Program-made: the position numbers and the translations under genes | Origin: Schmidtea nova | Taxonomy: Eukaryota | Assembly: GCA_044892505.1 (NCBI GenBank) | Contig: CM097883.1 | Coordinates: forward strand, 419,492,001 to 419,556,000 | Length of the DNA stretch: 64,000 nt | Reading direction: 5' to 3' | Shown here: piece by piece, positions 39,880-61,166 of the stretch | Numbering within the stretch: the first letter of the stretch is position 1 | Layout: every line of letters begins with the position of its first letter | The notes under the pieces: generated by a model | What the model saw: the letters and a program-made list of their open reading frames with translations, nothing else | Database searches by the model: none | Told to the model about the DNA's origin: nothing

Positions 39880-40928
39880 GCTGACAATGAGAATTCAAGC
39901 AATTCCACAAACAGAAGAGGCCAGTATAAGCGAATAGCAGAGGAAACTAGATCAAGAATCATACATTCTCATCAGAGTGGTAACTCAGTAAAAGTAATTG
40001 CGGAATATGAAATGCTGAGTGTTTCAACTGTTAGAAATATCGTGAATAAATTTATTGGGGCGGGAAGAGTAGCATCTCTGCCGCGGGGAGGCAGTAAAAA
40101 CGTTAAAATCAATGATGAAATGAAATCATTTATTTTGGGTCTTGTTGATAATGATTGTTCAATCTCACTGAGGCATATCCAAGGAAAACTGCAGGAAAAT
40201 TATGACATAAAAATTGCAATATCAACCATATTCTATTGCCTGAAAAATCTTCATTATACACTTAAAAAACTAACTCCGATACCAACAAGACGTAATGACG
40301 CTAGATCGATTGAATTGCGAAGGGTCTACGCTGCAAGATATTTGGAAATTGAAGAGTCTTATGCCGGAGAAGATATTTTTTCTTAGACGAAGTTGTATTC
40401 AATGTATCTATGAGATGCAAGAAGGGACGCTCAATCGTTGGAAGTCCAGCAAATTTAATCGTTCCGAATATTCGTTCTAAAAATTTATCTGTGTGCAGTG
40501 TTATGACCAAGAATGGCTTGGTGTTTTGGAAGTTGAGCCACGTACCATACAACACCGCTTCTTTTGTTGGATATGTCGATGAATTCGCTGACTATATCGT
40601 CGATCGCAATGTTATGAATTGTGTACTGGTGATGGACAATGTGGCGTTTCATAAGAGCGCACGAATAATGGAATTGACCTCTAAGTGGAACATTCGAGTT
40701 GAATTCCTCCCGCCTTATTCACCTTTCCTGAACCCAATCGAGAATTTATTCTCGAAATGGAAAGATTTTGTAAGACGATCTAAGCCAATGAATGAAGAAG
40801 AACTGATGGTAGCAATGAATGATGGATTGAGAACCTTGAGCCAAACTGATTGTGAATATGAAAAAATATATAAGAATATGAAAAAATATATTCGTTTATC
40901 AATACAGGGACTTGAAATTGTGGATTAA
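39880..40928 (+). mobile_element. IS630/Tc1-like DD34E transposase (one frameshift at ~40380)
   Basis: HTH region (STVRNIVNKF...PRGG), then FLDE...MDNVAFHK...FLPPYSPFLNPIE, with 34 residues between D and E. Confidence 0.9.
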
Positions 40929-41774
40929 AAATAGTTTTATGCTTAATATAAGCTTTTAGAAACCATTGTTTTGCTAATTTTTTATCGCCTATAGTATATT
41001 TTCAACATGTGTTGTATTAAAATTAAATCGAAGTGAAATAAAATCAATTTGAAATGAAAATATACCATTTTGAAATGAAAAACTACGAAAATTAATTATA
41101 AAAATTAAATTGAAATGAAAAAACATTAACTAGAATTGAAAATCCTATATATATTAATTTTAAATAAATATTAATTTTAGAATAAAATAACTAAAATAAT
41201 GTAAAATATATTTTTGTTAATTTCTAATTACTAAAAATAGAATGGATATTATAAATAATTACTAATTTTAAGTAAAATATATTAATAGTAATTTATATTT
41301 AATTATAATTTACTTATAGTAATTTATAAAATAATATTTTAATATATAAGGCATTAGATTTTAGTTCAGAAAGGAGAATTATGTTTAATCAAAATGGAAT
41401 AGCGAAAACGTTTAAATTAAAATTATAAATATTATTATCAATTGTGTGGATTTCAAAGTAAATAATTATGAAACTTTCGAGATTTTTTCCTGTCGAAAAT
41501 TCATTTAAATAGAAGTTCTATTTCTGTGGGTTGTTGATCGTCATGGTTCAGCATCAACAACTCAACAAATAAAACATTATCTTAACCATCTTGTTGCCCG
41601 CCGAAATGTAACGTTCGTAATGCAACAAATTGGGGATGTCCGAAAATAGCGAGCGTCGAAAAATCGAAACTATGATTGACCGAACATCACAATGGGTTCA
41701 AGGGCTACCAACAGAAGGTTTAGTGCCCATTTTAAGTCCCTTAACATGATTTCATTTTTAGTAATTGTTTCATT

Positions 41775-44222
41775 TGTTATAGTTGATTGTTGATTGTTTA
41801 AAGAATAAAAATAGAGGTGTTTTTTTAAATAAATTATGTTGCACTCAATGCTAGAAAGAATATTGTTTAAGGGAGCTGTCGTTTACCTAGACAATGTATT
41901 GATTTATGGAAAAGACAGAAAAGAAAATAATTTACGGCTAGAGGAAGTTTTCAAAAGGATACAAATAGCAGGGTTGAAGGTTAATCCTGGTAAATGCGAT
42001 ATTTCTAAAAAAGAACTGACATTTCTGGGACACGCTGTTAGTTCCAAGGGGATAAAGACGAATGACAAGAAGATCAAAGAAATTAAAAATGCAGAGATAC
42101 CGACATGCGCTAAACAATTGAGGTTGTTCCTTGGTATGACTAACTACTACAGGAAGTTCATAAAAGATTACGCAAAGATTGCTGAACCGTTGTACGTTGC
42201 AACTTCTGGATGCGGGAAAATGATTAATTGGTCAGAAGATTGCAATAAAAGTTTTGAATTGCTTAAAACAAAATTATGTGAAGTCCCTATCCTGGATTAT
42301 CCAAGAGTAGAGGACAAATTTATTCTGGACACAGATGCCAGTTTTGGAGCTATTGGAGCAGTTCTGTGTCAAGAAAGAGGAGACCATACAGAGGTGGTTA
42401 TTGCGTCTGGATCAAGACATTTACCGGCACACGAAAAAGGGTATTGTGTGACAAGGAAGGAATTGCTTGCAATACACGAATATGTTTTATATTTCAAACA
42501 ATATCTATTTGGGAAGGCTTTTGTAGTGCGAACAGATCACAAAGCACTAGTCTTCATGAGATAAACCAAGAAAGCAATAAGCCCACAGTTTCAGACATGG
42601 CTAGCCGACCTTTCCGGATATGACTTCGACTTGCAATATAGGACAGGAGAAGAACATGGGAATGCAGACGGTATCTCAAAGATCAAGGGAATGTTATGTG
42701 CTCAATGCCAGACACAACATGAAGACGCGAAAGAGGATAAAATAGAGTGAGACATATTATTATATTACAGAAGACTGAATCAATGACAAGACTATTAAGC
42801 AAACAAGAGGATGACGTAGACTTCATACACATGTCAAGGATATTACTGGGAAAAGAGAATGGAGAAAATCTGAACAAGAAGAAATTCCCTTTTAATTTGC
42901 TGAAGAACACAAAATTCGAAAACGGATTATTACTGCTTGAGAAAGACGGAAAGGATGTAATATTAGTACCATTTGACTACACTAATATATAAGTCAAAGA
43001 TATACATAGAGAAATGTGATATATTGGAGTGAAGAAATTAAAACGTTAAATGAGCGATTTATTTTTTTGGCCGAATATTCATGGAACAATTCAAAGCTGT
43101 TTAAGATCATGTGAAATATGTTGTAAACGGAAGATAGTACAAGAGAAAACAAAGGAACGACTGATACCGATAATGAGTTCAGATTTCTTAGAACAACTGG
43201 TTGTAGATAAGGCCCACATGAAACCTCAAGGAAGTTACAGATATTTATTAGTTATTATTAACCGTTAAATCAAGATGGTTAGTCTAACTGCACTGGAAAG
43301 ACAAGATGAGAAATCGTTGTTCAAAGCCTTATTAGAGAAGTGGATATATAGATTCGGTAAACCACGAAGTCTTTTTATCAGACAAAGGTAAGAATTTCGA
43401 CAGCATGTTCGTGAAGACACATCTAGGAAAGTTAGGCATCGAACAAGACCTGAGCTCACCATACCAACACCAATCGAATGGGCTGGTGGAAAGAACTATA
43501 CGGACAGTCAGAGACTTATTAACCACTTCTATATTCAGTGGATTAAGGGACAGAAATTGGGTAGATTTACTCCCACGTATAGAATTTTGTATCAATGCGA
43601 CAACGCAGAGTACAACGGGATTCTCACCATTCGAAATTGTTTTCGGGAGGAAAATTAATCTACATTCACGTTAATCTACTACCACAAACAAATTTGAACT
43701 CAACCGAAATACGCAAGCAGGTTCTAGCAAACAGTGAAAGGGCAGCAAAAAGAATGAAAGAAACAGAGGCGGATAGAAGGACGCATAGAACTTTTGAGGT
43801 AGGGGAGAAAGTATTGGTTCGGAAAGAACCACAAGATCGGGACAAAGATGGCCTTCAGTACGATGGGCCGTTCGTAATATCAAGATTTTTGTCAGAACAC
43901 CAAGTGGAGTTTATCGATGGAGATTCAAAGAAACTTCGACGTATCGAATGGATGAAGAGATGGGCAGATCCTTAAAGAAAGGGGGAGTTATATAAATTGT
44001 TGATTGTTTAAAGAATCAAAAGAGAGGTGTTTTTTAAAAAAAATTATTATCTTGCAATTTGTATTTTTTATGAATTCAGAAGGAGACATAACTGTGATAT
44101 TTATTCTTTACTTTCTTATTCGTTGCTGTTCTCTATAATAAAAGATTTTCTATAGAGAATTTTCATTTGTTATTTCGTTTTCTTTGGAGTTCAGAAAAAC
44201 ATGAAAATTAACGAATATTACA
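41775..44222 (+). mobile_element. Internally deleted Ty3/Gypsy element (RT C-term, RNase H, integrase, 3' LTR ~43986-44222)
   Basis: YLDNVLIYG, LDTDAS, YCVTRKELLA, QSNGLVER, YDGPF; PPT AAAGAAAGGGGG. A ~60-bp copy of the LTR start at 41775-41835 is fused directly to RT. Confidence 0.9.
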
Positions 44223-44632
44223 ATGCCTATATTATAGTAATTTATATTTAACACCTAATGAGTTAATTACAACTTACTATAAATGTTCCAATTTTAAGGA
44301 TCCATGGTATAAATATCACTAAAAATTAAATTAAATTATTTATAATAATTTAGTGATTCTAAATTTATAACAAAACTAAATTAAAATATAATGAAATATA
44401 AAACCATGGTAAAAAAGAGTACATCACGTTTAAAACATATCATTGACTTCATAATTAATAAATTGAAATAAAACATAAATCTTACTTAAAAAACCTATTT
44501 CAATAATCTAGAAATTTAATTTTAATTAAAACTCAAAAAATATGTATATTTATAAATATATTTATAATCCATCACCTTTTTGTTTTAACTGTCTTAATAA
44601 ACTAAATCTATTTATTAAAATTAAATTATATC

Positions 44633-47600
44633 ATGTCGGGCCCTGTTGCGCGAAAATTTTTTGGGTAAGACTATTTTGTGTATATTTTCATTGTTAATTA
44701 ATTCTTGTAGTGGTAGGAATGCTCCAAATAGAAATTCATTTGAAAGAGTTAATCCTAAATATGTTCCACCTAGCAGGCATGCGATTTTCATTCGAGGATT
44801 TGCCAATGATGTAGATACGCATAAAATTAGGTATATCTTATTCTAAATATTTAATAAAAGTACCCTGAAATTTACAATAGAGACTATTTTCAAGAAGCTT
44901 CTAAAAGCAATTGTGGCGTTGATTTTACTAGTTACAATGATGAACAGCGTAAATTAAGCATTGCATTACGGTTTGAATCACACGATATTGCTAAAGACAT
45001 GTTGTTGAAGTAATAAATCGATAATTGAAATCACGATTAATCGATAGATTTAGATTCAATAATACGGAAATATTTGGATATCGAGTGGAAGTGACTTGGT
45101 TTAAGGATTTGAAGAAAGCTCGCGATAGAAGTAGAGTGTTAATATTATCTTATCAGTTAGATCCAGTGATAAATCTGGTTTTTATTTAATATTTAATGTC
45201 TTGACAAATTTCAAATTTAATTAATGAAAAATATTTTTCAAAAGTATGTGCAATTTAACTAAATTATTATTACAAAATCAATCTTTAAACATTCCACTTT
45301 TTAAATGTATAATAATTATAAATTTTAAGAAATGGAATGTAAGATATCGGATTAAATCTAACATTTAAATTCAGTTTCAAAAAGCTATTTAGATTTTAGG
45401 TTAAATTAATTGTAATTCGCAATCATATATTATAGTCATAATTATTGATTCAATATAATTTGTGTAGCCGTGAAGCTGTTGACTTACATATAATTTGTGT
45501 TTCGTTAATGGTACAGGAGTTTTTAAACGCCTAATTTTGTAAGATATCAAATATAATCATATACATTTGGTGAAAGCAGTAATTCAATGTAATTTGGTAG
45601 CTGATTGGTCAGATCCTGTCTGGATTTGGCTACAATTTTATAATCAATAATCCAATAACCACTGGTTATTATAGAATAATAATTTTTAAAAGAAATAAAA
45701 GTTACATTTCATGAACAATGAATAATTAATTACAAAAACTTTTATAGAACTATATATATATAACTAATATAGCTAATACAACTACACTATTTACTAACAA
45801 CATTTAAAATTATCTAAATTAAGTAAATTAACCCCTTTCTGCATGAGTGTTCATATATGAACATAATTAATTAAGACTCGAAAATATTCTTTTTTCATAA
45901 AAATATTATTTTGTTTCTGGTAACATTCTTAAGTTGCAACCCTGTTTATTCAAATTTAGTATCAAAAACTGTCAAGTGGCGCTAATGACCCTACTTTTTT
46001 AAATGTAACGGTTACTATTCGGCCATTTTTTAAATATAAACAAAAAATTCATGCAGAAAGGGGTTAACAAATATCAAAGATAATTTTTTTGTAAACATGG
46101 AACTTTTGGTGTTGGTAGCTTTCTTCAATTTATGGAATATAAATTTTTTGAATTGATTGAACATTGCATTTACAAATTGGACAAGAATTGGCTGGGTTAT
46201 CTTTCAAGATACCGGAACAATTGTCACAGATACACACATGGAAACAAGGCACCATCATGTGGCTGATGCGTTCAATTAGACAGATTTTACAAACAATTGC
46301 AAGTGGTAGATATGTTTGCTTCTGAATGGCTTGCACACTTCTCTTGTTCAGCCTCCAGTGCTTCAATTTCCTCTTGTTCTCTCATTAGGTGTTCATTTCT
46401 TTCCTCAGTTTGGATCTTTTCCAAATCAGAATTAGACAGTTTAGGTTTGAAAATTGAATTGGAGTAATTGCATGATCTTGGAGTTTTTGTTCAGCTTTGT
46501 CCGTTACACGCTTTGCAAACTTAGTCTTCTTTGCATCCTCCATTCTCACTGGCAAATTGTTCTTGATCTGAGCAATCTCAATGACAGTTGGCTCAATAAC
46601 ATGCCGTGCTAATTGATCTAAAAAGGGACCAAATTGTCACCCCATGATGATTTTTTTGGCCATTCTGCAATGCAAGCTTTCACAATAGTTATTGGTCCTA
46701 TGTTATAGGCCATAACTGCTAATGACATCAGTTCCCACTTCCTGCATCCAGTACTTCAAAAAGTACTCCTGGTGAAGGATTTTCCACTGTCGCCGATATC
46801 TAGCACTTCTCAGCTGAGCGATTTCACCCTTGAGGACGTTTAATGTTGGAATTATTTGGTCCGGAAGAAGTAAAGACAAGGCAAAGTGTTTCCTTGCAAC
46901 TGTTGCAAATTCCTTATCATCTCTGAACTCAACAGCCATTGTTTCCTTCACTTTCCGGAGTAATTCTTGTCCAAAATGGAATCGGCATCCAGTTGTTTTA
47001 ATGTTGGGAAAAGCAGATCAAATAACTTTTAAGAGTCCAGCCTCAAAATCTGACATTGAATTTTGAGGTGCAAACTTTTCCCCTCCAAAGGATTTCAGCT
47101 TTTTGATGATGCTCTCATACAAGCCCTGACGTTTACTTGTCATAACAATATGAATGATTGGAAGAACTGTTCCTTTAAAGTCTATTAAGATGTTCAAAAC
47201 TTAAGCAAACAGTTTTGGATGTGGTCTGACTTTGAATGTGGCATCAAGAAACAAGTTTTTGGCACCTGACAAAATTTCTAAGCATTCATGTACTGCAAAG
47301 ATTAGACCAATCTCATCTCCAGACTCGACCCAGCTTTTGTAAAAATGAATTGAATGGGTGATCACCATTATCCAAAACAAAGACTGTCTCCTCTACCGTA
47401 CCAGGTATTGGTGGAAAAAGTGAACTCCTTTGATATTTTAAAGAAGGAGCAACTCCAGGCCAGTTTATATTTGCCTGTGGTTCTTGACTTGACTGAGATA
47501 ATACGTCACTCCAGATGTTACGTAGTGGATCTGTTGTTGTACTTGATCGTTTTTTCATTTCAACTTTGGCTTGAAAAATATCCCAATATTTTGAGTCAAC

Positions 47601-50600
47601 TTGCTTGCAGGTATGACCATTTGTCTCATACAATAAACTATCCTCCAGTTTGGCTCGTCCATTGCATTTTTGTGTGTAAAACTTACACTTTAAATAGATT
47701 CTGTCCTCTGTTATCTTCTTTGACACAACATAAGCTCTATTTACCTTGTTACGGTAAACTTTGGCACCCTTGAGACATTCTATCACTGTGAAAGGTATAT
47801 TCTCAGACATCACTTTTTTTGGTCTTGACTGGGGAGCGTGTTAAACGGTAATAAAAAGTTAACAATATTAATTAGCAATTTCTTTTAATTAAATAATTCA
47901 TAAAAACTGAAATTAATAAACAAAAAAAGGAACCCATAAAAACAAGTTTTTAATGTAACTTTCTTTTTCTCATGTTCTCGGTTAATTTTATTGTTGTTTT
48001 ATTGTTTGGTAGTTTCTTGGCAACAGTAAATTGAAAAATCTCATTGTTTCAAAAAATTTTCAATTTTTCAATGGAATAATTTGTGGGCCTCCACGAGTCG
48101 GCTCGCAAATTTTCAGATCGATTGGATATCGGGAAGTGGGTTAAAAATCTTTGACAAGAAAACAAACAGAAATTGGAAGTTAATAGAAAGAGTTAAATTA
48201 AAACATAAACATAATTAATGAAATTATTTACATAATGTGAAAAAACATTTTATTAACTTTTTCCCAAAAATTATTTGAATTAAATTGTCGACGATTTTTT
48301 TGGGATTCTTATATTAAGTCATCGACTAATTTTTTGGCATTTGTTGGATGTCGGTTATTTTTTGGGTTTGTAGTCGACTAATTTTTCGCGATCTGTCGAC
48401 TTTATTGACTTCCATATTCGACTATTCTGACTTTTACCTCCAGTTTATTTTTGTACCTAGTTTATTTGCAACCGATTTATCTCAAAATGAAGCTAGCATT
48501 ACTTGCAGCATTAAAAGTGAGTTTGTAGGATTTCAAATGTATTTAATCAAAGGGGTAAAAATTGTCATGTATTCAGACTCTGTTTGATTATATAGTCACT
48601 GGGTTTGATCTTGAATGGTATCGAGATTCTTACATGGTTTAGGTGAGAAATAAGCCTCTACCAAATAGAAATTGTATCGAGTATCACATTAAAAACCAAT
48701 TTTAAATTACTATATAATTGCTACATTATTCACTGTAAGACGATTATTTTCTTGATAAGAAAGTTCGATGAGATTGCATTTTTATAATAATTGATAATAA
48801 TATTGCAGTGTTGGATGAAAGAAGAGTTCCATTTGATGAGCATCGTATAAATTTCAAAAACAATCGTTTCGATTATGAAAGACGTGACAATCGTGAATGG
48901 TCTGATGCAAGGAAAAAGTTTTCCCAAAATAATAACAACAAACACAGTAAATCAGTTGAACGAAGTGATGCCAATAGTGAAGCTTCATACGGTGGTCGCA
49001 AGCGAAAACATTCCAGTGAATATGAGAAAAGTCGTTCACATTCATCAAATCGATCGGAAAAATCTTATTCAGAATCAGATTCTCGTTCGATATTAATAAA
49101 TAAAGTAGAGGGTGATATTCGCAGTAAGAGTCCATCTGTTAGAGAAGTGAAAGGTAAAAACGATGTAGTATCATCTTTGTCAGACAAACCGGCCGCATAT
49201 ACGGTGGATTTAGATGAGAGTTTCATTGAAAATGTGCCACAGGTTAAAGTGGCAGTGGCTCCAGTTCAGAAAGAACAAAGTATTTCTTCTATTCCTGATA
49301 ATTATAAGGCTGATAACATGGCTAATCATAAACATGATTCGGAAGATAAGAAGAAAAAGAAGAAGAAACGTAAACGTCGACGTGTTGAACACAGTGGTAG
49401 CGTGGATTCCTTTGGAGAGTATGGATTAATTATTTTTATATAATTATTTCTTTTTATTAATAATATTTTTAGTATTATCTTTATTATAATTATTATTAAT
49501 ATTACTATCATTATTATTAATATTATTACTTCTTTTTTCTTTCTTTTATAATTATTCTTATCTATATTATATTTTCTTTTTTTATTAATATTATTTTAAT
49601 TATGTTATTATTATTATCTTGCTTATTATTATCATTCTTTTTCTTCTTAAATTATGTTATTATTTTATTATTAACAATATTACTTTTTATTATTTTTATT
49701 ATTTTCATTATTATTTTATTATTGTAATTTTTTCTTTCTTTTATTATAATTTTTAATATCTATATTATTGTTTCTTATTATTTTATCATTAATGTTATTT
49801 CTTTTTTCTTTTCTTATCAATATTTTTTCTTATCAATAATTTTTCTTATCAATATTATATTTTCTTTTTCTTATTAATTCTATTTTAATTATGTTATTAT
49901 TATTAATGTTTTATTACTAACAATATTATTTTTACTATTATCTTTATTATTATTATTATTTTATCATTATTGTTATTATTTCCTCTTTCTATATTATTAT
50001 AATTTTTATTATTTTTTCTTTTTCTTATTTTCTTAATGTTATTTTTTCTTTTTTTCTTATCAATATTGTATTTTCTTTTTCTTATTAATATTATTTTTCT
50101 TATGTTATTATTATTTATTATTATTATTATTATTATTATCATTATTATTATTAATGTTATTATTTATAATTGTTATTATCATTAANNNNNNNNNNNNNNN
50201 NNNNNNNNNNNNNNNNNNNNNNNNNNNNNNNNNNNNNNNNNNNNNNNNNNNNNNNNNNNNNNNNNNNNNNNNNNNNNNNNNNNNNNNNNNNNNNNNNNNN
50301 NNNNNNNNNNNNNNNNNNNNNNNNNNNNNNNNNNNNNNNNNNNNNNNNNNNNNNNNNNNNNNNNNNNNNNNNNNNNNNNNNNNNNNNNNNNNNNNNNNNN
50401 NNNNNNNNNNNNNNNNNNNNNNNNNNNNNNNNNNNNNNNNNNNNNNNNNNNNNNNNNNNNNNNNNNNNNNNNNNNNNNNNNNNNNNNNNNNNNNNNNNNN
50501 NNNNNNNNNNNNNNNNNNNNNNNNNNNNNNNNNNNNNNNNNNNNNNNNNNNNNNNNNNNNNNNNNNNNNNNNNNNNNNNNNNNNNNNNNNNNNNNNNNNN

Positions 50601-53600
50601 NNNNNNNNNNNNNNATTATTATTAATTATTATTTCTTCTTAATTATATTCATTTACTATTTAATAAATAGCATTGCTTACTATTTGAAATATTAACAAAT
50701 TTAAATCAAATATGTTTATCAAGTTGTTTAAATTTGTATTGTCATTGTGTTATCGTTTGAAAACATACCGAATGTTACTTCTTTAAAGCAGCGGCTCAAA
50801 TATTTTTTTCAGGTAAGTTCAATGGCAAAACTTAATAACAAGCCGCGGGTCAAAATTATTTTAAATTTAACAATAACTAAGCACATTTTAGTTTGATTAT
50901 TTCATATTTTTATCAATCATTAAGTATTAAGTTGATGTAAGGTAAAAGTTGATAAGGTAAAAGCGTGAATTCGGAAGAAGGAAAATATTCAGAAAGAAGT
51001 GATGAGTAAATTTAAAATAATTTCGTATTGGAGTGATCAGGATCTTTTTAAGGTCAAATTATTTTATCAAATAAACGTTTCGGGAAAATGCTTTTTTTAA
51101 TAAACTTGGTTAACGATAAAACAAAAAAAATCTAAACAAAATTATAGCCAACAATGTAACAGTATAATTTCTGTTTAACTAATTATTATTGTACAGAAGC
51201 GAATATTACATTCATAAGCTATGTTTGCAAGTTTACATATTATCTGTAAGACCTTATATATTATATGTAGTACCTTACATATTGTCTGTGGTACCTTACA
51301 AATTGCCAAAAGACCTTACATATTATCTGTAAGACCTTACATATTGTCTGTAAGAACTTTCCTTTTATCTGTAGTACCTTACATATTATCTGTAAGACCT
51401 TACATATTATCTGTAAGACCTTACATATTGTCTGTAAGAACTTTCCTTTTATCTGTAGTACCTTACATATTATCTGTAAGACCTTACATCCAGTGTACCA
51501 GGAAAAGTAATCAATGAAGCTGTTGCAACCTTGTTTTATACTTACCTGTCGTGAAGAGCAATCGCCACTTCTCCTGCATAGCGCTGATGAGAACCAAAAG
51601 CTCATAACTAGTCTGATATTCTGTTGTTTAGCACTGGATATCACAAAGATTTACCTTTTGTTAATGATTTTTTTTCAAATTCAACTGTTTAATGTCATTT
51701 TCAATTATAACACGAATTTTTAATAACAAAATCAGGTTAGTTCGAAATTTGGTCAACAAATTATTCAGATTTGATGAAATTTGTTAATATTTATTCGATA
51801 AAGTTCGGATAAATTTATCCAAAATGGAACTCTCTTCAATATACATCTTTTCATATTCGTTCGACTATTGGTTATAATAAAATATAAAATAATTTTTTTG
51901 TCAAAATATTATTAATTAACTGTCAAAAATCCTTATGTGTACAATTAATAATAATGTAGATCGTCTAAGATAGCAAAATATAATCCAGCAACTGATCAGA
52001 ATGAAAATGCTCAGTTTTCAGCTATAGCAGGAGATATAAATAATTGGAAGCAAACAGCGTCTGATTCTGATGATTTCCTTACCAAAAACAGTAAGATTAT
52101 GTATTTTATTGTACATTTAATAATCAATAATTCAAAATATTATCCTCCCCTTCACTGCGGAGGACGAGTATGTCTCGTCATGTCGTGTATTTGTTTGTAC
52201 ACAGTCCTTGGAATCCTGTATTTTTTATTATAAAAAATGCTTTGTTTTAACAAAATTATCCTGTCGCACACAGCATTTCTACATGGTCACAGCGAAAGGG
52301 TTAGGTGTTTATAATTTACAATTATATTGAACAATTTATAATTTTTCTGATAAAAATGGGCTTGGATCAATAAAAAATTAATTAAACTTTAATTAAATCT
52401 AAAATTCATTGAAATCTTTATTATTAATCATTTTATTCTATACAGACTTGATAGAATCTTCTAATAAAAATAAATTGAAAACATTTTCGATCTGATCTTA
52501 AAAAATTTTAAAAAAAGATTTTTTTATTTAGTTTGATAATGGCGATTTTATTTTATTATTATTTTATCAATGGTATTTCTATAAATAGTAAAATAAATAA
52601 ATAAAACATTAAAAGTAAATTCTTTATTTATTTTATTATTAATTTTTACAAGCTTGATAAAGTCAACTAATAAAAATAATTAAAAATTTCGATCTAGTCT
52701 TACAAATAATTTTATGAACATTATTTTATTAAAAAATGATCAAACGTGAAAAAAAAGATAATTATGATTTTATTTTGTTTATTTCTAGTTATTTTATCAA
52801 TGATATTTAAATATCCAAAAATATTTATTGGTTATAAATTATAAAATAAATAAATAATACAAAAAAATTTATTTAAATTCTTTATTTTTTTATTAATTTA
52901 TACAAGTTACAGAAAAGTCTCCTAATAAAAACAATTTTGATCTAGCCTTAAAATATTTTTATGAAAATTTTTTTTTTTAAAATGATCAATTTCATTTATT
53001 TTATATTATTTTAGTTATTATTTAAATGTCCTAAAATATCTATTTGTTAAAATAAATATTAAAATAAATAAATAAAACATTAAACGTAAATTCTTTATTT
53101 ATTTTATTATTAATTTTTACAAGCTTGAAAAAGTCACCTAATAAAAATAATTAAAATTTTTTATATTTATATTATTTTAGTTATTATTTAAATGTCCTAA
53201 AATATCTATATGTTAAAATAAATATTAAAATAAATAAATAAAACATTAAAATTAAATTCTTTATTTTATTATTAATATATATTTGGTATATTTTTTATTG
53301 TTTAATTAATTATTTTATTAGTGGTATAAAGAATAAAATAAATAAAACATAATAATTAAACTTTAATTTAATGCAAAATTAATATTGCTATAAAAAAGCT
53401 TTTTCTGCTTCAATTAAAAATAATGCAAAAATATCCGAATTTATAAACCATCATAATCAAAATCTTATAAACAATCCCAAGTATCTGGATGAAAATTGTT
53501 ATAGATTCCCCATTAAATATTTCTCGATTTGTTTCATATTTCACTCTCATTCCGTGTTGAGAACTGGCAAACATGACGTAGGCAGAATTCGGTTTAACAA

Positions 53601-56089
53601 TTATATCATTTATTGGTCCGAATTTGTTTAAATAATTTTCAATCATTTCTCTACTCACTTTATTTTGATTTAAAATAAATGGCCCCATGTAAATTAGATA
53701 TGGATAGTGGATAAATTTGTTTGATTTCATTCCTATTTTCAATATTACAGACAGCCCTCGTATAACGCGGTTTACTGGTTCCGTTTTATGTAAAACCGGG
53801 TTAAATAAAACTAAACATTTACATATAATAAAAAAATTATCTAACATTTTAAATAATTACGGAGTTAAACGAGGGTTACTTGTATATTAAAATGAATTTT
53901 CAACGATGTTTTTTCGATATGGTAAAGAAATTTTTCCTGTCAATTTATTTAACTCAGTATTTTTTCATGTTAGATATTAATCAGTTTATCAAGAAGTGTT
54001 GTAGCGACTTCAAGTCATTTACAGTGAAGTTATAAAAATAGGTTATAATAAATAAAAAGGGAATTTAAATTACGAGGTCTTTATTTTGTATATTAAACAT
54101 TTATTTGACAGATTAATTTTTAAAATTAAATAGTGATTCTTTTAAAACAATCCCATGAATAGATGCTAACTTTTTCACAATTAGTCTTTCTTCGTTTCCC
54201 TTCGCAAATTTANNNNNNNNNNNNNNNNNNNNNNNNNNNNNNNNNNNNNNNNNNNNNNNNNNNNNNNNNNNNNNNNNNNNNNNNNNNNNNNNNNNNNNNN
54301 NNNNNNNNNNNNNNNNNNNNNNNNNNNNNNNNNNNNNNNNNNNNNNNNNATTTTTCCAGGTACTGTGTCCGTAAATTTATTTTTTCACATTCAAAAACAA
54401 AACTTATTACTTTATTAATGTCTTATAGTTATTTCATAGCTTTAACCAACAGGATCAAAGTATAGTTACTCTTTCTTTTTATATTCTGTTTGTTATTTAA
54501 TTTATTTTAACCAACAGGGTCACATTTTGTGGGATTATTGGGTAACACTAAAACATATTGCTGTATCTTACTGTGATAACCCAAAATTGGTATAACAAAG
54601 TTCCAGATGGACATCAAGCCTAGCTTGAGTGATATGCTTTGCTTGCTTTTAAATATTCGTCCGGGTAACCCCAGCTAGTATAAAAATTACTATTGATGAT
54701 TAAGTTAATATAACGATTGAAATCCACAATTGATAAAGACTGTGTCGAAATGTCGAGCACTTAACAACCAAAAACACAAAAAATTGATCTATATAATCAT
54801 TCAATTATGAAAATTATTGATGAAAATAATTCGACTGTGATGATTATAAATCAACATGATCTAAATTTCTTCCATTATGTGTTTTAATAACAAATGGTTT
54901 TTAGTGTTTTGTTTTTTATTGCTTTTATTTTTTAGATCAAAGTATAAAATCGAAACCAAAAATTCCCGTGTCTGCATCAGAAAAGTTAAATAATGAAAAA
55001 AGTCTTAAACTTTTAAAAATGAAAGTTGAAAATATTGAAAAAGTTTATTATTGATTATTAAACTTGCAAGAAAATAGTCATTTTTGTTTTCGTTTTTAGG
55101 CTTATAAAAAGGACAGTGAAACATATTCTAGTGTTATCAGTGTTTTGATTCGGTAATTCATTTAATTTTATATTTTATTTATAATCATTTATATTTCAAT
55201 TAAGTGTCTTTTGTCACCCATTGATATAATTCTTTATTGCACTCTTATTCATATTAAATATTATATTTTCAAGGTTACATTGTCGTATTATATAGATTTT
55301 TGGTATCTCTATTTATCTTTCAAAGAATATATTTATATATATTCCCCGGCAAATTTCACATTAAAAATCAAGATTTATCGAATTTAATTATTTTCCGATA
55401 GTGTTGATTTTAATTTCGTAAATCGAGTGAAAATGAATAATTTCTGTTTGATAATATCTTGCACAAACATATGATTATATTATTTATGCCAGATTATGAT
55501 TAATTTTGGATATTATTTACAGGATTTATGATGATGATAGATGCTATAAATTTTGCTATTTATTGATATTGACAATGAAAAATTATTACAATTTCAAGAG
55601 AAAATATTATCGAAATGATTATTTCAAGAAAAATTTTGTTGATCTCTATATTTATATTTTATTATTAAACAACAAACAAATTTGAAATTATTAAAAATTA
55701 AAGAAACTTGATGGTTTAATTATATATTCTGAATGGATAAAAATGAATATTCTATTTAATGTTCACTCTCATAAGCATTGAATTTTAAAAATACTCGTTT
55801 TATTGCGATTTTATAAAGTAAGTTATAGTGCTTTTTAAATTTATAAAGCAAACCTGGTTTTTCATTTTAGTTACTCTTTCTTTTTATATTCTGTTTGTTA
55901 TTTAATTTATTTTAATTTGTGTGTAGTAAATCGCCGGAATTAAAGGTGAAATTAGAATCGATGTTGAAAGATATATTAATAGATGTTGGAAACCAATGTA
56001 TGGATTCAATGCGCGAATATATACTACATTTATCGGATAACAATCAAAATCATATAGAACCCAGCGCTTCGCCTGTATCGAGCATGTAA
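44633..56089 (+). CDS. Spliced gene: N-terminal RRM, Arg/Ser/Lys-rich low-complexity middle, Periphilin-1-like C-terminal helical domain
   Basis: Phase-consistent GT-AG exons: 44633-44664, 44711-44830, 44881-45009, 45054-45130, 45157-45177 (tentative), 48809-49418, 51960-52090, 54936-55042, 55100-55152, 55927-56089, with AATAAA at ~56100. C-terminus KVENIEKAYKKDSETYSSVISVLIRKSPELKVKLESMLKDILIDVGNQCMDSMREYI. Confidence 0.75.
45832..46063. mobile_element. piggyBac-type MITE
   Basis: TIR CCCCTTTCTGCATGA / TCATGCAGAAAGGGG with TTAA TSD. Confidence 0.9.
46130..47813 (-). mobile_element. FLYWCH-MULE transposase with C-terminal RING finger (frameshifted), intronic
   Basis: YLKCKFYTQKCNGRAK...GHTC; LFLDATFK; SDFEAG; GCRFHFGQ; RTNNYCESLH; CKIC...PCFHVCICDNC...CPICK. 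Confidence 0.85.
50186..50615. other. Assembly gap flanked by AT-rich low-complexity DNA (49440-50185)
   Basis: Run of N. Confidence 1.
51233..51490. repeat. 21-bp minisatellite (ACCTTACATATTATCTGTAAG), ~12 units
   Basis: Seen directly; a variant unit recurs at 84-bp spacing. Confidence 0.9.
52441..53300 (+). repeat. Tandem ~210-250-bp AT-rich repeats related to the hammerhead-bearing family
   Basis: Units start near 52441, 52648, 52901 and 53118. They share CTTGATAAAG...GATCTAGTCTTACAAATA...ATGAA.ATTATT...GATCAAA with 31478-31581. Confidence 0.65.
53410..53730 (-). CDS. Small single-RRM ORF antisense within the intron of the RRM-periphilin-like gene
   Basis: LIYMGPF (RNP2-like)...IENYLNKFGPINDIIVKPNSAYVMF (RNP1-like)...FNGESITI. 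Confidence 0.5.
   Translation of the reverse strand: MKSNKFIHYPYLIYMGPFILNQNKVSREMIENYLNKFGPINDIIVKPNSAYVMFASSQHGMRVKYETNREIFNGESITIFIQILGIVYKILIMMVYKFGYFCIIFN
53748..53882. mobile_element. pogo/Tigger-like MITE
   Basis: Imperfect TIRs CAGACAGCCCTCGTATAAC / GTTAAACGAGGGTTACTTG flanked by TA. Confidence 0.6.
54213..54349. other. Assembly gap
   Basis: Run of N. Confidence 1.
54726..54830 (+). ncRNA. Further hammerhead-family copy with compensatory stem II
   Basis: TTGATAA-A-GAC TGT GTC-GAAA-TGT-C, followed by the family tail GATCTATA...TATGAAAATTATTGA. Confidence 0.55.
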
Positions 56090-56812
56090 TATTCCTGTTA
56101 ATAAATATATATATTAGTCGTTTTATTACGTTTGTTTGATATGATTTTGTTATGAAAATTACTTTTTAGCGATATTTATTCAAATTATTTAATACAGGCC
56201 CGGTTTAAGTCGAAGTGTGATTTTTAAAATAAATATCTGAGTATAAATTAACACTCACAGGTGCTGTGTCCTAACAGAAGTTTAAAAACGGCCGAATTGT
56301 AATGTTTCCATAAAATATGTTTGTTTCCAAAATCTTATCTAATGGTAATTAGCTTTAAAGTTATTCATATTTAGTCACCAAAATAAATATTAATTTTTTA
56401 AAATGTGTTTAATAATACAATTAGTGAAAAATGTATTTATTTGGAGTGTTTTATAAATTTTTGAAATGTTTTTTGCTGCAGGACATTTGTGTCGATAGTC
56501 TTGTAAAGTTTTAATTTTGCTTTTTATATAGTTATAAAAAATTAATGCAAAAGAAATTGAAGAACATTTGTTGAATTTATCAGATAGCTTAGCCAGTAAA
56601 CTTTAAGCGAAAACCCCTGTTAAATAGTTAAACGCATAGTTAAAAATTAAATTCATTCGTTAAATGTAAATATACAGTAAGAAATCTGCACCAAGTACCA
56701 ATAATACACTAGAACAGCGTTTTACAACCCTTTTACGATTATCAACGATTTCCAATTGCTAAAAATTCAAATCGCTCATGTTGGGACACATTGGGGTAAA
56801 ATAGATGTAACT

Positions 56813-60302: not shown

Positions 60303-61166
60303 TTATAATTTAATTGTTTTTGGGTCATGACAAACTGCCCCGTGATCCAGTTGAATTTGACACATGAATCGCAACGGCGCAATCAATCCTTCATAGCTTT
60401 CTAAGTTGAAATGATTCTCTTCTTCTAAGAATAGCAGAGCTCTCCCAACCGCTTCAACAGTACTGACGCACTTGCTATTTGGCTGAGTACGAATTACAAA
60501 TTCGCTTTGCCTCTGAAACACTTCATCTGTTGACGATGCCGAAATAACAACCTTCTGTATATCATGCAGCCATTTATTCCTCAGATAAATGCCTTTAGCC
60601 TGTGACCAGGTTCCGTCTAGAATTATCAAATTGTGTAGTTTTATATTAATTTTATCTATTGGAATTGCGTCTTTAGATGGATATAATACTGCAACAGAGT
60701 CAGTGTTTATACTATTGATTAATTCTGGATATCTTACAAATGTTAAGGCAAAAACCATGACAAATATTACTTGGAAGCACTGAAATTTCGACCTTTCAAC
60801 ACTTGTACTTTATCACTATCAATAGCTAATTGTAATATTATAGCTGTTTGGATTTTTCGGCTTTCCTATTAATATATTTTAAGCATATTAAATGTGTTTA
60901 TTAGAGAATATTTAATTTGATAGGCAAATTAAAATTTACAATACCTCAAATGGATGCTGTAAAATAGTTATTTTTGTTTTGATATTTAGTTTACTTTTAG
61001 GTAAATGGGCACACCAACACACTTTAATAGGTCTTCTAAAATTATTTTTAAGAGATATTTGCTTTAAAAATATGACATACTTGCATTGGATACATGATAC
61101 TCTTTTATGGTTAATTTTGCTCTCTAATGGTTCATCTATTAAATCGACAAATTCGAAATCCTGCAT
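60303..61166 (-). CDS. DTWD2: tRNA-uridine aminocarboxypropyltransferase, DTW domain protein 2
   Basis: Exons 61166-61081, 61035-60945, 60865-60771 and 60732-60303 (introns 45, 79, 38 nt, phases consistent). Motifs CIQCKRPIKVCWC, ILQHPFE, LYPS, LIILDGTWSQAK, IRTQP, VSTVEA. Confidence 0.92.

What the first reader, a model, noticed from the sequence alone, without database searches (positions are those of the whole stretch)
44633..56089. RRM-fused Periphilin-like gene: candidate invertebrate HUSH-type transposon-silencing subunit
Seen: a phase-consistent exon chain that the ORF track does not assemble. It encodes an RRM, then an Arg/Ser/Lys-rich region, then ..IEKAYKKDSETYSSVISVLIRKSPELKVKLESMLKDILIDVGNQCMDSMREYI. 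Known: the human Periphilin-1 C-terminus (recalled IEQVYRQDCETFGMVVKMLIEKDPSLEKSIQFALRQNLHEIGERCVEELKHFI) dimerises and binds TASOR in HUSH, and human Periphilin binds RNA via a disordered Arg/Tyr-rich region rather than an RRM. Inference: this lineage keeps a Periphilin-like protein with a folded RNA-binding module, possibly an ancestral HUSH-like RNA sensor. Its own introns are filled with TEs.
Basis: partly seen in the sequence, partly recalled or inferred. Interest (0 to 1): 0.82.

Follow-up and report, generated by a model that had tools for sequence, protein, structure and literature searches.

The report
Planarian periphilin-like gene with RRM
A real, expressed and conserved flatworm gene joins an RRM-like domain to a tail resembling human Periphilin, the RNA-binding subunit of the HUSH transposon silencer; nothing here shows that a HUSH-like complex exists in this animal.

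Summary
The exon chain is real, with two corrections. The gene has nine exons (44633-56089, + strand), giving 1422 coding bases and 473 aa with no internal stop. An exon at 51960-52090 was missing from the chain I first built by hand, and the large exon ends at 49418, not 49396.

One spliced, RNA-like contig joins the RRM exons to the large exon and to the new exon, skipping the first N gap. Both gaps lie in introns. The link from 52090 to 54936 rests on reading phase only.

Two related species show sharp exon-limited conservation. Exons 1-4 are 94% identical in protein, with differences by codon position of 9/4/50. The large exon shows 28/22/124.

The last exon alone hits Pfam Periphilin_C (E 7.8e-5) at the correct end of the profile. 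That score is below the curated cut-off, because only a fragment could be scanned. RRM support from the tools is weak, and the RNP1 motif is degenerate.

No full-length relatives, no TASOR partner and no MPP8 could be shown. Earlier notes indicate the genome is a planarian. The scan had not noted periphilin before.

Verdict: a periphilin-family variant with an RRM-like head. A HUSH role remains speculative.

The parts
44633..44664 (+). Exon 1: ATG and MSGPVARKFFG, donor GTAAGA
   Evidence: Read from sequence. The ATG, the peptide and the donor are conserved in related contig L002/P0002. The RNA contig does not cover it.
44711..44830 (+). Exon 2: start of the RRM-like domain (RNP2-like AIFIRGF)
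   Evidence: The junction 44830|44881 is confirmed by spliced contig X4/25, which covers 44742-44830. The whole exon is conserved in L002 without gaps.
44881..45009 (+). Exon 3: core of the RRM-like domain (degenerate RNP1, KLSIALRF)
   Evidence: Both junctions are confirmed by X4/25. Weak Pfam hit RRM_PARP14_1, E 0.15, profile positions 22-58 of 80. Conserved in L002.
45054..45130 (+). Exon 4: last strand of the RRM-like domain (EIFGYRVEVTWF) plus a basic tail
   Evidence: The joints 45009|45054 and 45130|48809 (GT..AG, skipping 3678 bases) are in X4/25. Conservation with L002 ends at the donor.
45131..48808 (.). Intron 4, holding transposon debris
   Evidence: Minus-strand ORFs carry a RING finger (E 6.7e-9) and a weak MULE transposase hit. 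Repeat-level summed contig depth at 45830-46210 and 47920-48300 in the DNA-like runs.
48809..49418 (+). Exon 5: disordered Ser/Lys/Arg/Asp/Glu-rich region. It holds a conserved Arg/aromatic block (DERRVPFDEHRINFKNNRFDYERRDNREW) and the basic run KKKKKKKRKRRR.
   Evidence: X4/25 covers 48809-49418. Similarity to L001 begins at the acceptor and ends at the donor. 76% aa identity to P0001, differences by codon position 28/22/124, pN 0.13 against pS 0.95.
49419..51959 (.). Intron 5, with ATT-type simple repeats, the N gap 50186-50614 and a 21/84-base tandem array at 51233-51489
   Evidence: The RNA contig passes from 49418 straight to letters that map to 51960-51989. Tandem Repeats Finder result.
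51960..52090 (+). Exon 6 (131 bases), absent from the chain I first built by hand
   Evidence: The loose letters behind 49418 in X4/25 match 51960-51989 exactly. Acceptor TAG, donor GTAAGA, open frame, and it restores the phase that exon 7 needs.
52091..54935 (.). Intron 6 (inferred), with the N gap 54213-54349 and an antisense RRM-like ORF
   Evidence: Phase fit only.
54936..55042 (+). Exon 7: ..SASEKLNNEKSLKLLKMKVENIEK, leading into the periphilin-like domain
   Evidence: Sequence and phase. No Pfam hit when scanned alone.
55100..55152 (+). Exon 8: AYKKDSETYSSVISVLI(R)
   Evidence: Sequence and phase. At 17 aa it is too short for the family scan.
55927..56089 (+). Exon 9: KSPELKVKLESMLKDILIDVGNQCMDSMREYI.. 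and the TAA stop; AATAAA follows at 56100-56105
   Evidence: Pfam PF25234 Periphilin_C, E 7.8e-5, 23.4 bits, residues 1-36 against profile positions 47-82 of 84. Sequence.

Best explanation
This is a genuine, transcribed flatworm gene of nine exons under purifying selection. It encodes a 473-aa nuclear-type protein with three parts. The first is an N-terminal RRM-like domain of about 80 aa, split over exons 2-4, with RNP2 kept and RNP1 degenerate. The second is a low-complexity linker of about 250 aa rich in Ser, Lys, Arg, Asp and Glu. The linker carries a conserved Arg/aromatic block and a poly-Lys/Arg nuclear localisation-type run. The third is a C-terminal helical segment homologous to the Periphilin C-terminal domain. 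Shown: the exon structure from exon 2 to exon 6, expression in one run, conservation, and the partial profile match. Inferred: the tail forms a helical hairpin, as in human Periphilin, that dimerises and clamps a helix of a partner protein. Also inferred: the head and the Arg/aromatic linker hold the protein on RNA or RNPs, so that it acts as an RNA-associated adaptor. Whether the partner is TASOR-like, and whether the outcome is transposon silencing, is not known.
For: The spliced contig X4/25 joins 44742-44830 | 44881-45009 | 45054-45130 | 48809-49418 and continues into 51960 onward, all across GT..AG introns. Run X4 has no depth in the unique intron bins, so it behaves as RNA. The chain is 1422 bases with no internal stop. 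For exons 1-4 against L002, 112 of 119 aa are identical, differences by codon position are 9/4/50, and the introns are about 50% identical. For exon 5 against L001, differences by codon position are 28/22/124, pN is 0.13, pS is 0.95, indels are in frame, and similarity stops at the splice sites. The Periphilin_C hit of the last exon has E 7.8e-5 and lies at the C-terminal end of both the profile and the protein. The RRM_PARP14_1 hit of exon 3 is weak but consistent in position. Human Periphilin's C-terminal hairpin dimerises and binds TASOR, and its N-terminal region is Arg/Tyr-rich (PMC7544229).
Against: The Periphilin_C score of 23.4 bits is below the 27-bit curated cut-off and covers only 36 of 84 profile positions. 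Exon 7 alone gives no hit, and exon 8 is too short to scan. phmmer of exon 9 against PDB sequences does not reach human Periphilin. No RRM family passes a threshold on any exon. The junction 52090|54936 is not shown by reads. The first 40 letters of the RNA contig are not in the window, and they join at 44742 without an AG. No full-length relative was found, so the architecture is seen in this lineage only.
Confidence: 0.62

Rival explanations
1. One reading: the protein is the RNA-sensing subunit of a HUSH-like complex. It binds nascent transposon RNA through its RRM and recruits a TASOR-like scaffold for H3K9me3 silencing.
For: The periphilin-like tail. TASOR-like proteins (DUF3715-SPOC-DomI) exist in invertebrates (PMC10578480). 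A DUF3715 gene is noted elsewhere in this genome. The genome is rich in transposons.
Against: The earlier follow-up judged the DUF3715 gene of this genome to be a stand-alone domain, not the TASOR architecture (not re-tested here). No MPP8-like note exists in the scan. RNP1 lacks both aromatic RNA-stacking residues. No functional or interaction data exist, and no paper links periphilin or HUSH to planarians.
Confidence: 0.2
2. It is an SR-like RRM protein of nuclear RNA processing. The match of its tail to Periphilin_C would then be chance, or a generic amphipathic-helix resemblance, not homology.
For: The architecture of RRM plus a Ser/Arg/Lys-rich linker is typical of splicing-related proteins. 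The Periphilin_C hit is below the gathering score. The same exon also gave a clearly spurious Ig_F54D1_6 hit at E 0.007. There was no PDB sequence hit.
Against: The Periphilin_C E-value is about 100 times better than the spurious hit. It stays near 1e-3 after correction for the 18 fragments scanned. The match sits at the expected end of both profile and protein, and the two preceding exons continue in frame as helix-type sequence.
Confidence: 0.2
3. There are two transcription units. The RRM-linker gene ends after exon 6 or in unassembled sequence, and exons 7-9 belong to another transcript.
For: The junction 52090|54936 is unverified, and an N gap lies in that intron.
Against: Exon 6 ends in an open frame at a good donor (GTAAGA). 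Exon 7 begins at an acceptor in exactly the phase required and has no start of its own. The RNA contig has 229 more letters after exon 6, enough for exons 7, 8 and part of 9. No other coding-like + strand exon lies between them.
Confidence: 0.07

Closest known systems
Human Periphilin-1 (PPHLN1), subunit of the HUSH complex; Pfam PF25234 Periphilin_C; crystal structure with TASOR described in PMC7544229
   Same: The extreme C-terminus matches the Periphilin_C profile. A long disordered, charged region precedes it. That region contains an Arg/aromatic-rich block, reminiscent of the Arg/Tyr-rich N-terminal region needed for HUSH activity.
   Different: It has an RRM-like folded head where the human protein is described as having a disordered N-terminal domain. 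The linker is Ser/Lys-rich rather than Arg/Tyr-rich overall (Y 3%, R 7%). Partner and function are unknown. Dimer and TASOR-contact residues could not be mapped.
SR-like RRM proteins of nuclear RNA processing (for example RNPS1 or Acinus type); comparison from general knowledge
   Same: One RRM followed by a Ser/Arg/Lys-rich low-complexity region and basic nuclear localisation runs.
   Different: Those proteins have no Periphilin_C-like tail. The RRM here has a degenerate RNP1, and its only (weak) family hit is the PARP14 first RRM.
Yeast Lge1 (disordered region plus a C-terminal coiled coil that binds Bre1); the link to periphilin is my recollection of older Pfam annotation and was not tested
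   Same: The same logic of a disordered self-associating region followed by a short C-terminal helical partner-binding module.
   Different: No Lge1 family hit appeared for the last exon at E up to 10. No paper in the library links the two names.

Membership tests
Periphilin family (Pfam PF25234 Periphilin_C) | Sequence match to the Periphilin_C profile above the curated threshold | tested here: inconclusive
   Exon 9 alone scores 23.4 bits, E 7.8e-5, against profile positions 47-82 of 84; the cut-off is 27 bits. Exon 7 gives no hit and exon 8 is too short. The joined domain could not be scanned because it has no reference.
Periphilin family (Pfam PF25234 Periphilin_C) | The domain sits at the extreme C-terminus, after a long disordered region | tested here: met
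   The match ends 17 residues before the stop codon. About 250 aa of low-complexity sequence precede it.
Periphilin family (Pfam PF25234 Periphilin_C) | A helical hairpin that homodimerises (human Leu326, Leu333, Ile337) and binds a TASOR helix | not testable with these tools
   This needs a fold of the joined tail and an alignment to the human chain. phmmer of exon 9 against PDB sequences gave no periphilin hit. Residue roles are taken from PMC7544229.
Periphilin family (Pfam PF25234 Periphilin_C) | An Arg/Tyr-rich disordered N-terminal region that self-associates and binds RNA | tested here: not met
   The N-terminus is an RRM-like domain. An Arg/aromatic block exists, but at the start of exon 5. 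Overall Tyr is 3% and Arg 7.2%.
HUSH complex | A TASOR-type scaffold (DUF3715-SPOC-DomI plus a periphilin-binding helix) in the same genome | not tested
Only this window is readable.
HUSH complex | An MPP8-type chromodomain-ankyrin reader in the same genome | not tested
   The scan's notes hold only ankyrin modules fused to retroelement integrases.
RRM (Pfam RRM clan) | Profile match to an RRM family | tested here: inconclusive
   Exon-wise scans gave only RRM_PARP14_1, E 0.15, for exon 3 at profile positions 22-58 of 80. Exons 2 and 4 gave nothing. PDB phmmer of exon 3 gave nothing.
RRM (Pfam RRM clan) | RNP2 and RNP1 motifs with RNA-stacking aromatics | tested here: inconclusive
   Read by eye. 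RNP2 is IFIRGF, with its aromatic kept. RNP1 is KLSIALRF, with Ser and Ala at the two aromatic positions. Both motifs are unchanged in the related species. The consensus used is from general knowledge.

The most novel reading that the evidence does not exclude
Planarians have a HUSH-like, nascent-RNA-guided silencing pathway outside vertebrates. In it a periphilin homologue reads RNA with a folded RRM-type head instead of a disordered Arg/Tyr region, and docks onto a DUF3715 or TASOR-like partner through its conserved C-terminal hairpin.
Probability: 0.15. Interest if true: 0.85.

Novelty: new variant of a known kind. Interest (0 to 1): 0.55.

Why it matters
HUSH is described in the literature as a guardian of vertebrate genomes (PMC7532188), and only TASOR-like proteins have been traced into invertebrates (PMC10578480). 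A periphilin-like gene in a planarian would give a second HUSH-related part outside vertebrates. Planarians are RNAi-tractable and have a very transposon-rich genome, so the question 'is there an invertebrate HUSH, and how does it see RNA?' becomes directly testable. If the head is a working RRM, it would also show that the RNA-contact module of periphilin can be exchanged in nature. Domain-swap experiments in human cells already suggested this (PMC7544229). If the tail's similarity turns out to be superficial, this is an ordinary SR-like RRM protein.

Tried and rejected
1. My first hand-built chain used the donor at 49396 and joined the large exon directly to 54936. The RNA contig rejected it (donor 49418, then 51960), and the 49396 donor is not conserved in L001.

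2. Spliced-leader trans-splicing as the source of the 40-letter head of contig X4/25. The length fits the 40-41-letter leaders noted in this genome. But there is no AG before 44742, the head is not in the window, and no match exists in earlier notes. I could not read the planarian leader sequences, because PMC3994195 is not held. This stays unexplained.

3. Homologue searches. Exon 5 by word search and by the full phmmer scan found only P0001, the same exon in another species. Exon 9 found no candidate. The exon 1-2 ORF found only P0002. No full-length relative was found, so no survey of RRM-periphilin architectures was possible.

4. PDB sequence searches with exons 9 and 3 gave nothing useful.

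5. The ESM Atlas feature search with exon 9 gave only low-score, unrelated clusters.

6. Rfam on 40-58 kb gave nothing.

7. A search for LTR pairs upstream gave nothing.

8. Literature searches for periphilin with planarian, Lge1 or Schmidtea gave no papers.

9. The joined protein was not searched, scanned or folded.

Full report
WHAT IS THERE

Reading the sequence and checking it by script gives nine + strand exons, all with GT..AG borders:
- 44633-44664
- 44711-44830
- 44881-45009
- 45054-45130
- 48809-49418
- 51960-52090
- 54936-55042
- 55100-55152
- 55927-56089

Together they make 1422 bases, or 473 codons plus TAA, with no internal stop. AATAAA follows at 56100-56105. The quoted C-terminal peptide is encoded by the last three exons.

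GAPS (asked to be tested first)

Both N runs lie in introns. The run 50186-50614 is inside intron 49419-51959. A spliced contig passes from 49418 directly into letters that map uniquely to 51960-51989, so this gap does not affect the frame.

The run 54213-54349 is inside the inferred intron 52091-54935. The phase fits: exon 6 leaves one base and exon 7 supplies two. No read shows this junction. A hidden exon whose length is a multiple of three cannot be excluded.

I did not try to fill or look up any N.

TRANSCRIPT EVIDENCE

Four runs of one study hold the large exon. When laid on 44500-50185, X1-X3 give unspliced, genome-like contigs.

X4 has no depth in the unique intron bins. It has one 1305-letter contig that is spliced as 44742-44830 | 44881-45009 | 45054-45130 | 48809-49418 and then continues for 360 letters. 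The first 30 of those letters are 51960-51989.

This shows that the RRM exons and the Ser/Lys/Arg-rich exon are one transcript. It corrected my first chain on two points: the donor is 49418 rather than 49396, and there is an extra 131-base exon. After exon 6 the contig still has 229 letters, which is enough for exons 7 and 8 and 69 bases of exon 9. Those letters were not shown to me. This is one run of one study, and it consists of contigs, so it says nothing about expression level.

THE 5' END

The contig's first 40 letters are not in the window on either strand. They meet the gene at 44742, which has no AG before it, so this is not a normal cis- or trans-splice acceptor. Earlier notes report spliced leaders of 40-41 letters in this genome, but I could not obtain their sequence. 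I leave this point unexplained.

Independent support for exon 1 comes from a related species. P0002, from an ENA assembly, reads MSGPGPRKFFG, then an intron read-through, then the exon 2 peptide. Its contig L002 aligns with exons 1-4 without gaps.

SELECTION

Against L002, exons 1-4 differ at codon positions 1, 2 and 3 by 9, 4 and 50 bases, and 112 of 119 aa are identical. Introns and the upstream flank are only about 50% alike.

Against L001, a more distant species with high third-position G+C (GC3 0.70 against 0.26), similarity in exon 5 starts at the acceptor and ends at the donor. Indels are multiples of three. Differences by codon position are 28, 22 and 124, pN is 0.13 and pS is 0.95.

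The gene is therefore real and constrained, including its 'disordered' exon. Two blocks in that exon are nearly invariant: DERRVPFDEHR.NFKNNRFDYERRDNREWSDA, and HKHDSEDKKKKKKKRKRRR.EHSGS.DSFG.

DOMAINS

The joined protein was not scanned, searched or folded.

The last exon alone hits Pfam PF25234 Periphilin_C. The hit has E 7.8e-5 and 23.4 bits against a cut-off of 27 bits, with residues 1-36 matched to profile positions 47-82 of 84. The match therefore lies at the C-terminal end of both the domain and the protein. Exons 7 and 8 are placed to supply the first half of the domain. Exon 7 alone gives nothing, and exon 8 (17 aa) is too short to scan.

Allowing for the 18 fragments I scanned in all, the hit still stands near 1e-3. 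It is about 100 times better than the evidently spurious second hit. I put true homology at about 0.75.

For the RRM, only exon 3 gives a hit: RRM_PARP14_1, E 0.15, at profile positions 22-58 of 80, which is the right third of the domain. By eye the 72 residues from IFIRGF to YRVEV follow the RRM pattern without gaps. This uses a consensus from general knowledge. RNP1 reads KLSIALRF, with Ser and Ala where RNA-stacking aromatics normally sit. So the fold is likely, but RNA binding is not shown.

CONTEXT

Earlier notes of this scan point to a planarian: flatworm spliced leaders and Burro-like elements. I did not test that myself.

Upstream of the gene lie Tc1/mariner and Gypsy fragments, and downstream lies a DTW-domain gene on the other strand. 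Intron 4 holds MULE/RING debris and very high-copy repeats. Intron 5 holds ATT-type simple repeats and a 21/84-base tandem array.

RELATIVES AND LITERATURE

The word searches and the full phmmer scan found only single-exon fragments from two related species. I could not ask whether RRM-Periphilin_C proteins exist elsewhere.

The library holds no paper linking periphilin or HUSH with planarians. It does hold papers that:
- describe HUSH as a guardian of vertebrate genomes (PMC7532188);
- trace TASOR-like proteins into invertebrates (PMC10578480);
- define the human Periphilin hairpin, its dimer and its Arg/Tyr-rich N-terminal region (PMC7544229).

No MPP8-like note exists.

VERDICT

The periphilin-like tail is supported but not proven. 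The RRM is plausible but degenerate. The HUSH function is inference only.

I file this as a new variant of a known kind: a periphilin-family protein with an RRM-like head. Interest is moderate, chiefly because it makes an invertebrate HUSH question testable in an RNAi-friendly animal.

Noticed in passing
window 44742 (contig X4/25): The spliced RNA contig starts with 40 letters (TTACAGTTGCAGTTCGGCTTCGAGTTTGGG...) that are absent from the window. They abut 44742, which has no AG acceptor. If their last three letters were ATG, they would be in frame with the gene. Possible readings are an assembly chimera, an unassembled 5' exon, or an unusual leader.
   Followed up: partly
window 53410-53847, minus strand: A 145-aa ORF inside intron 6, antisense to the gene, has a weak RRM_1 hit (E 0.0025; ..FGPINDIIVKPNSAYVMFASS..). 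It may be an exon of a nested antisense gene or a pseudogene fragment.
   Followed up: partly
window 46130-47813, minus strand: Decayed transposon in intron 4. It has a C3HC4 RING finger (E 6.7e-9), a weak MULE transposase hit, and a Cys/His-rich ORF. Summed contig depth in the DNA-like runs is several-fold above the neighbouring exon bins, which suggests a repeat.
   Followed up: partly
window 45830-46210 and 47920-48300: Two short stretches where the summed contig depth in the DNA-like runs is hundreds to thousands of times that of the neighbouring exon bins. These are very abundant short repeats, possibly MITE- or SINE-like.
   Followed up: no
window 51233-51489: Tandem array of a 21-base unit (12 copies; higher-order period 84 bases) inside intron 5. 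It creates long spurious ORFs on both strands.
   Followed up: partly
window 60303-60758, minus strand: An ORF with a strong DTW domain hit (E 7.6e-26). It is probably an exon of a DTWD-type tRNA-modification gene convergent with the periphilin-like gene.
   Followed up: no
window 40012-43975, + strand: Upstream transposon debris: Tc1/mariner-type HTH plus DDE_3 (E 1e-20), and Gypsy RT/RNase H fragments (E 5e-27). No LTR pair was detected in 33-45 kb.
   Followed up: partly
L001 359-1009 against window 48809-49418: The orthologous exon in the more distant species has third-position G+C of 0.70, against 0.26 here, and synonymous sites are saturated. This is a strong shift in base composition between related flatworms.
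   Followed up: partly
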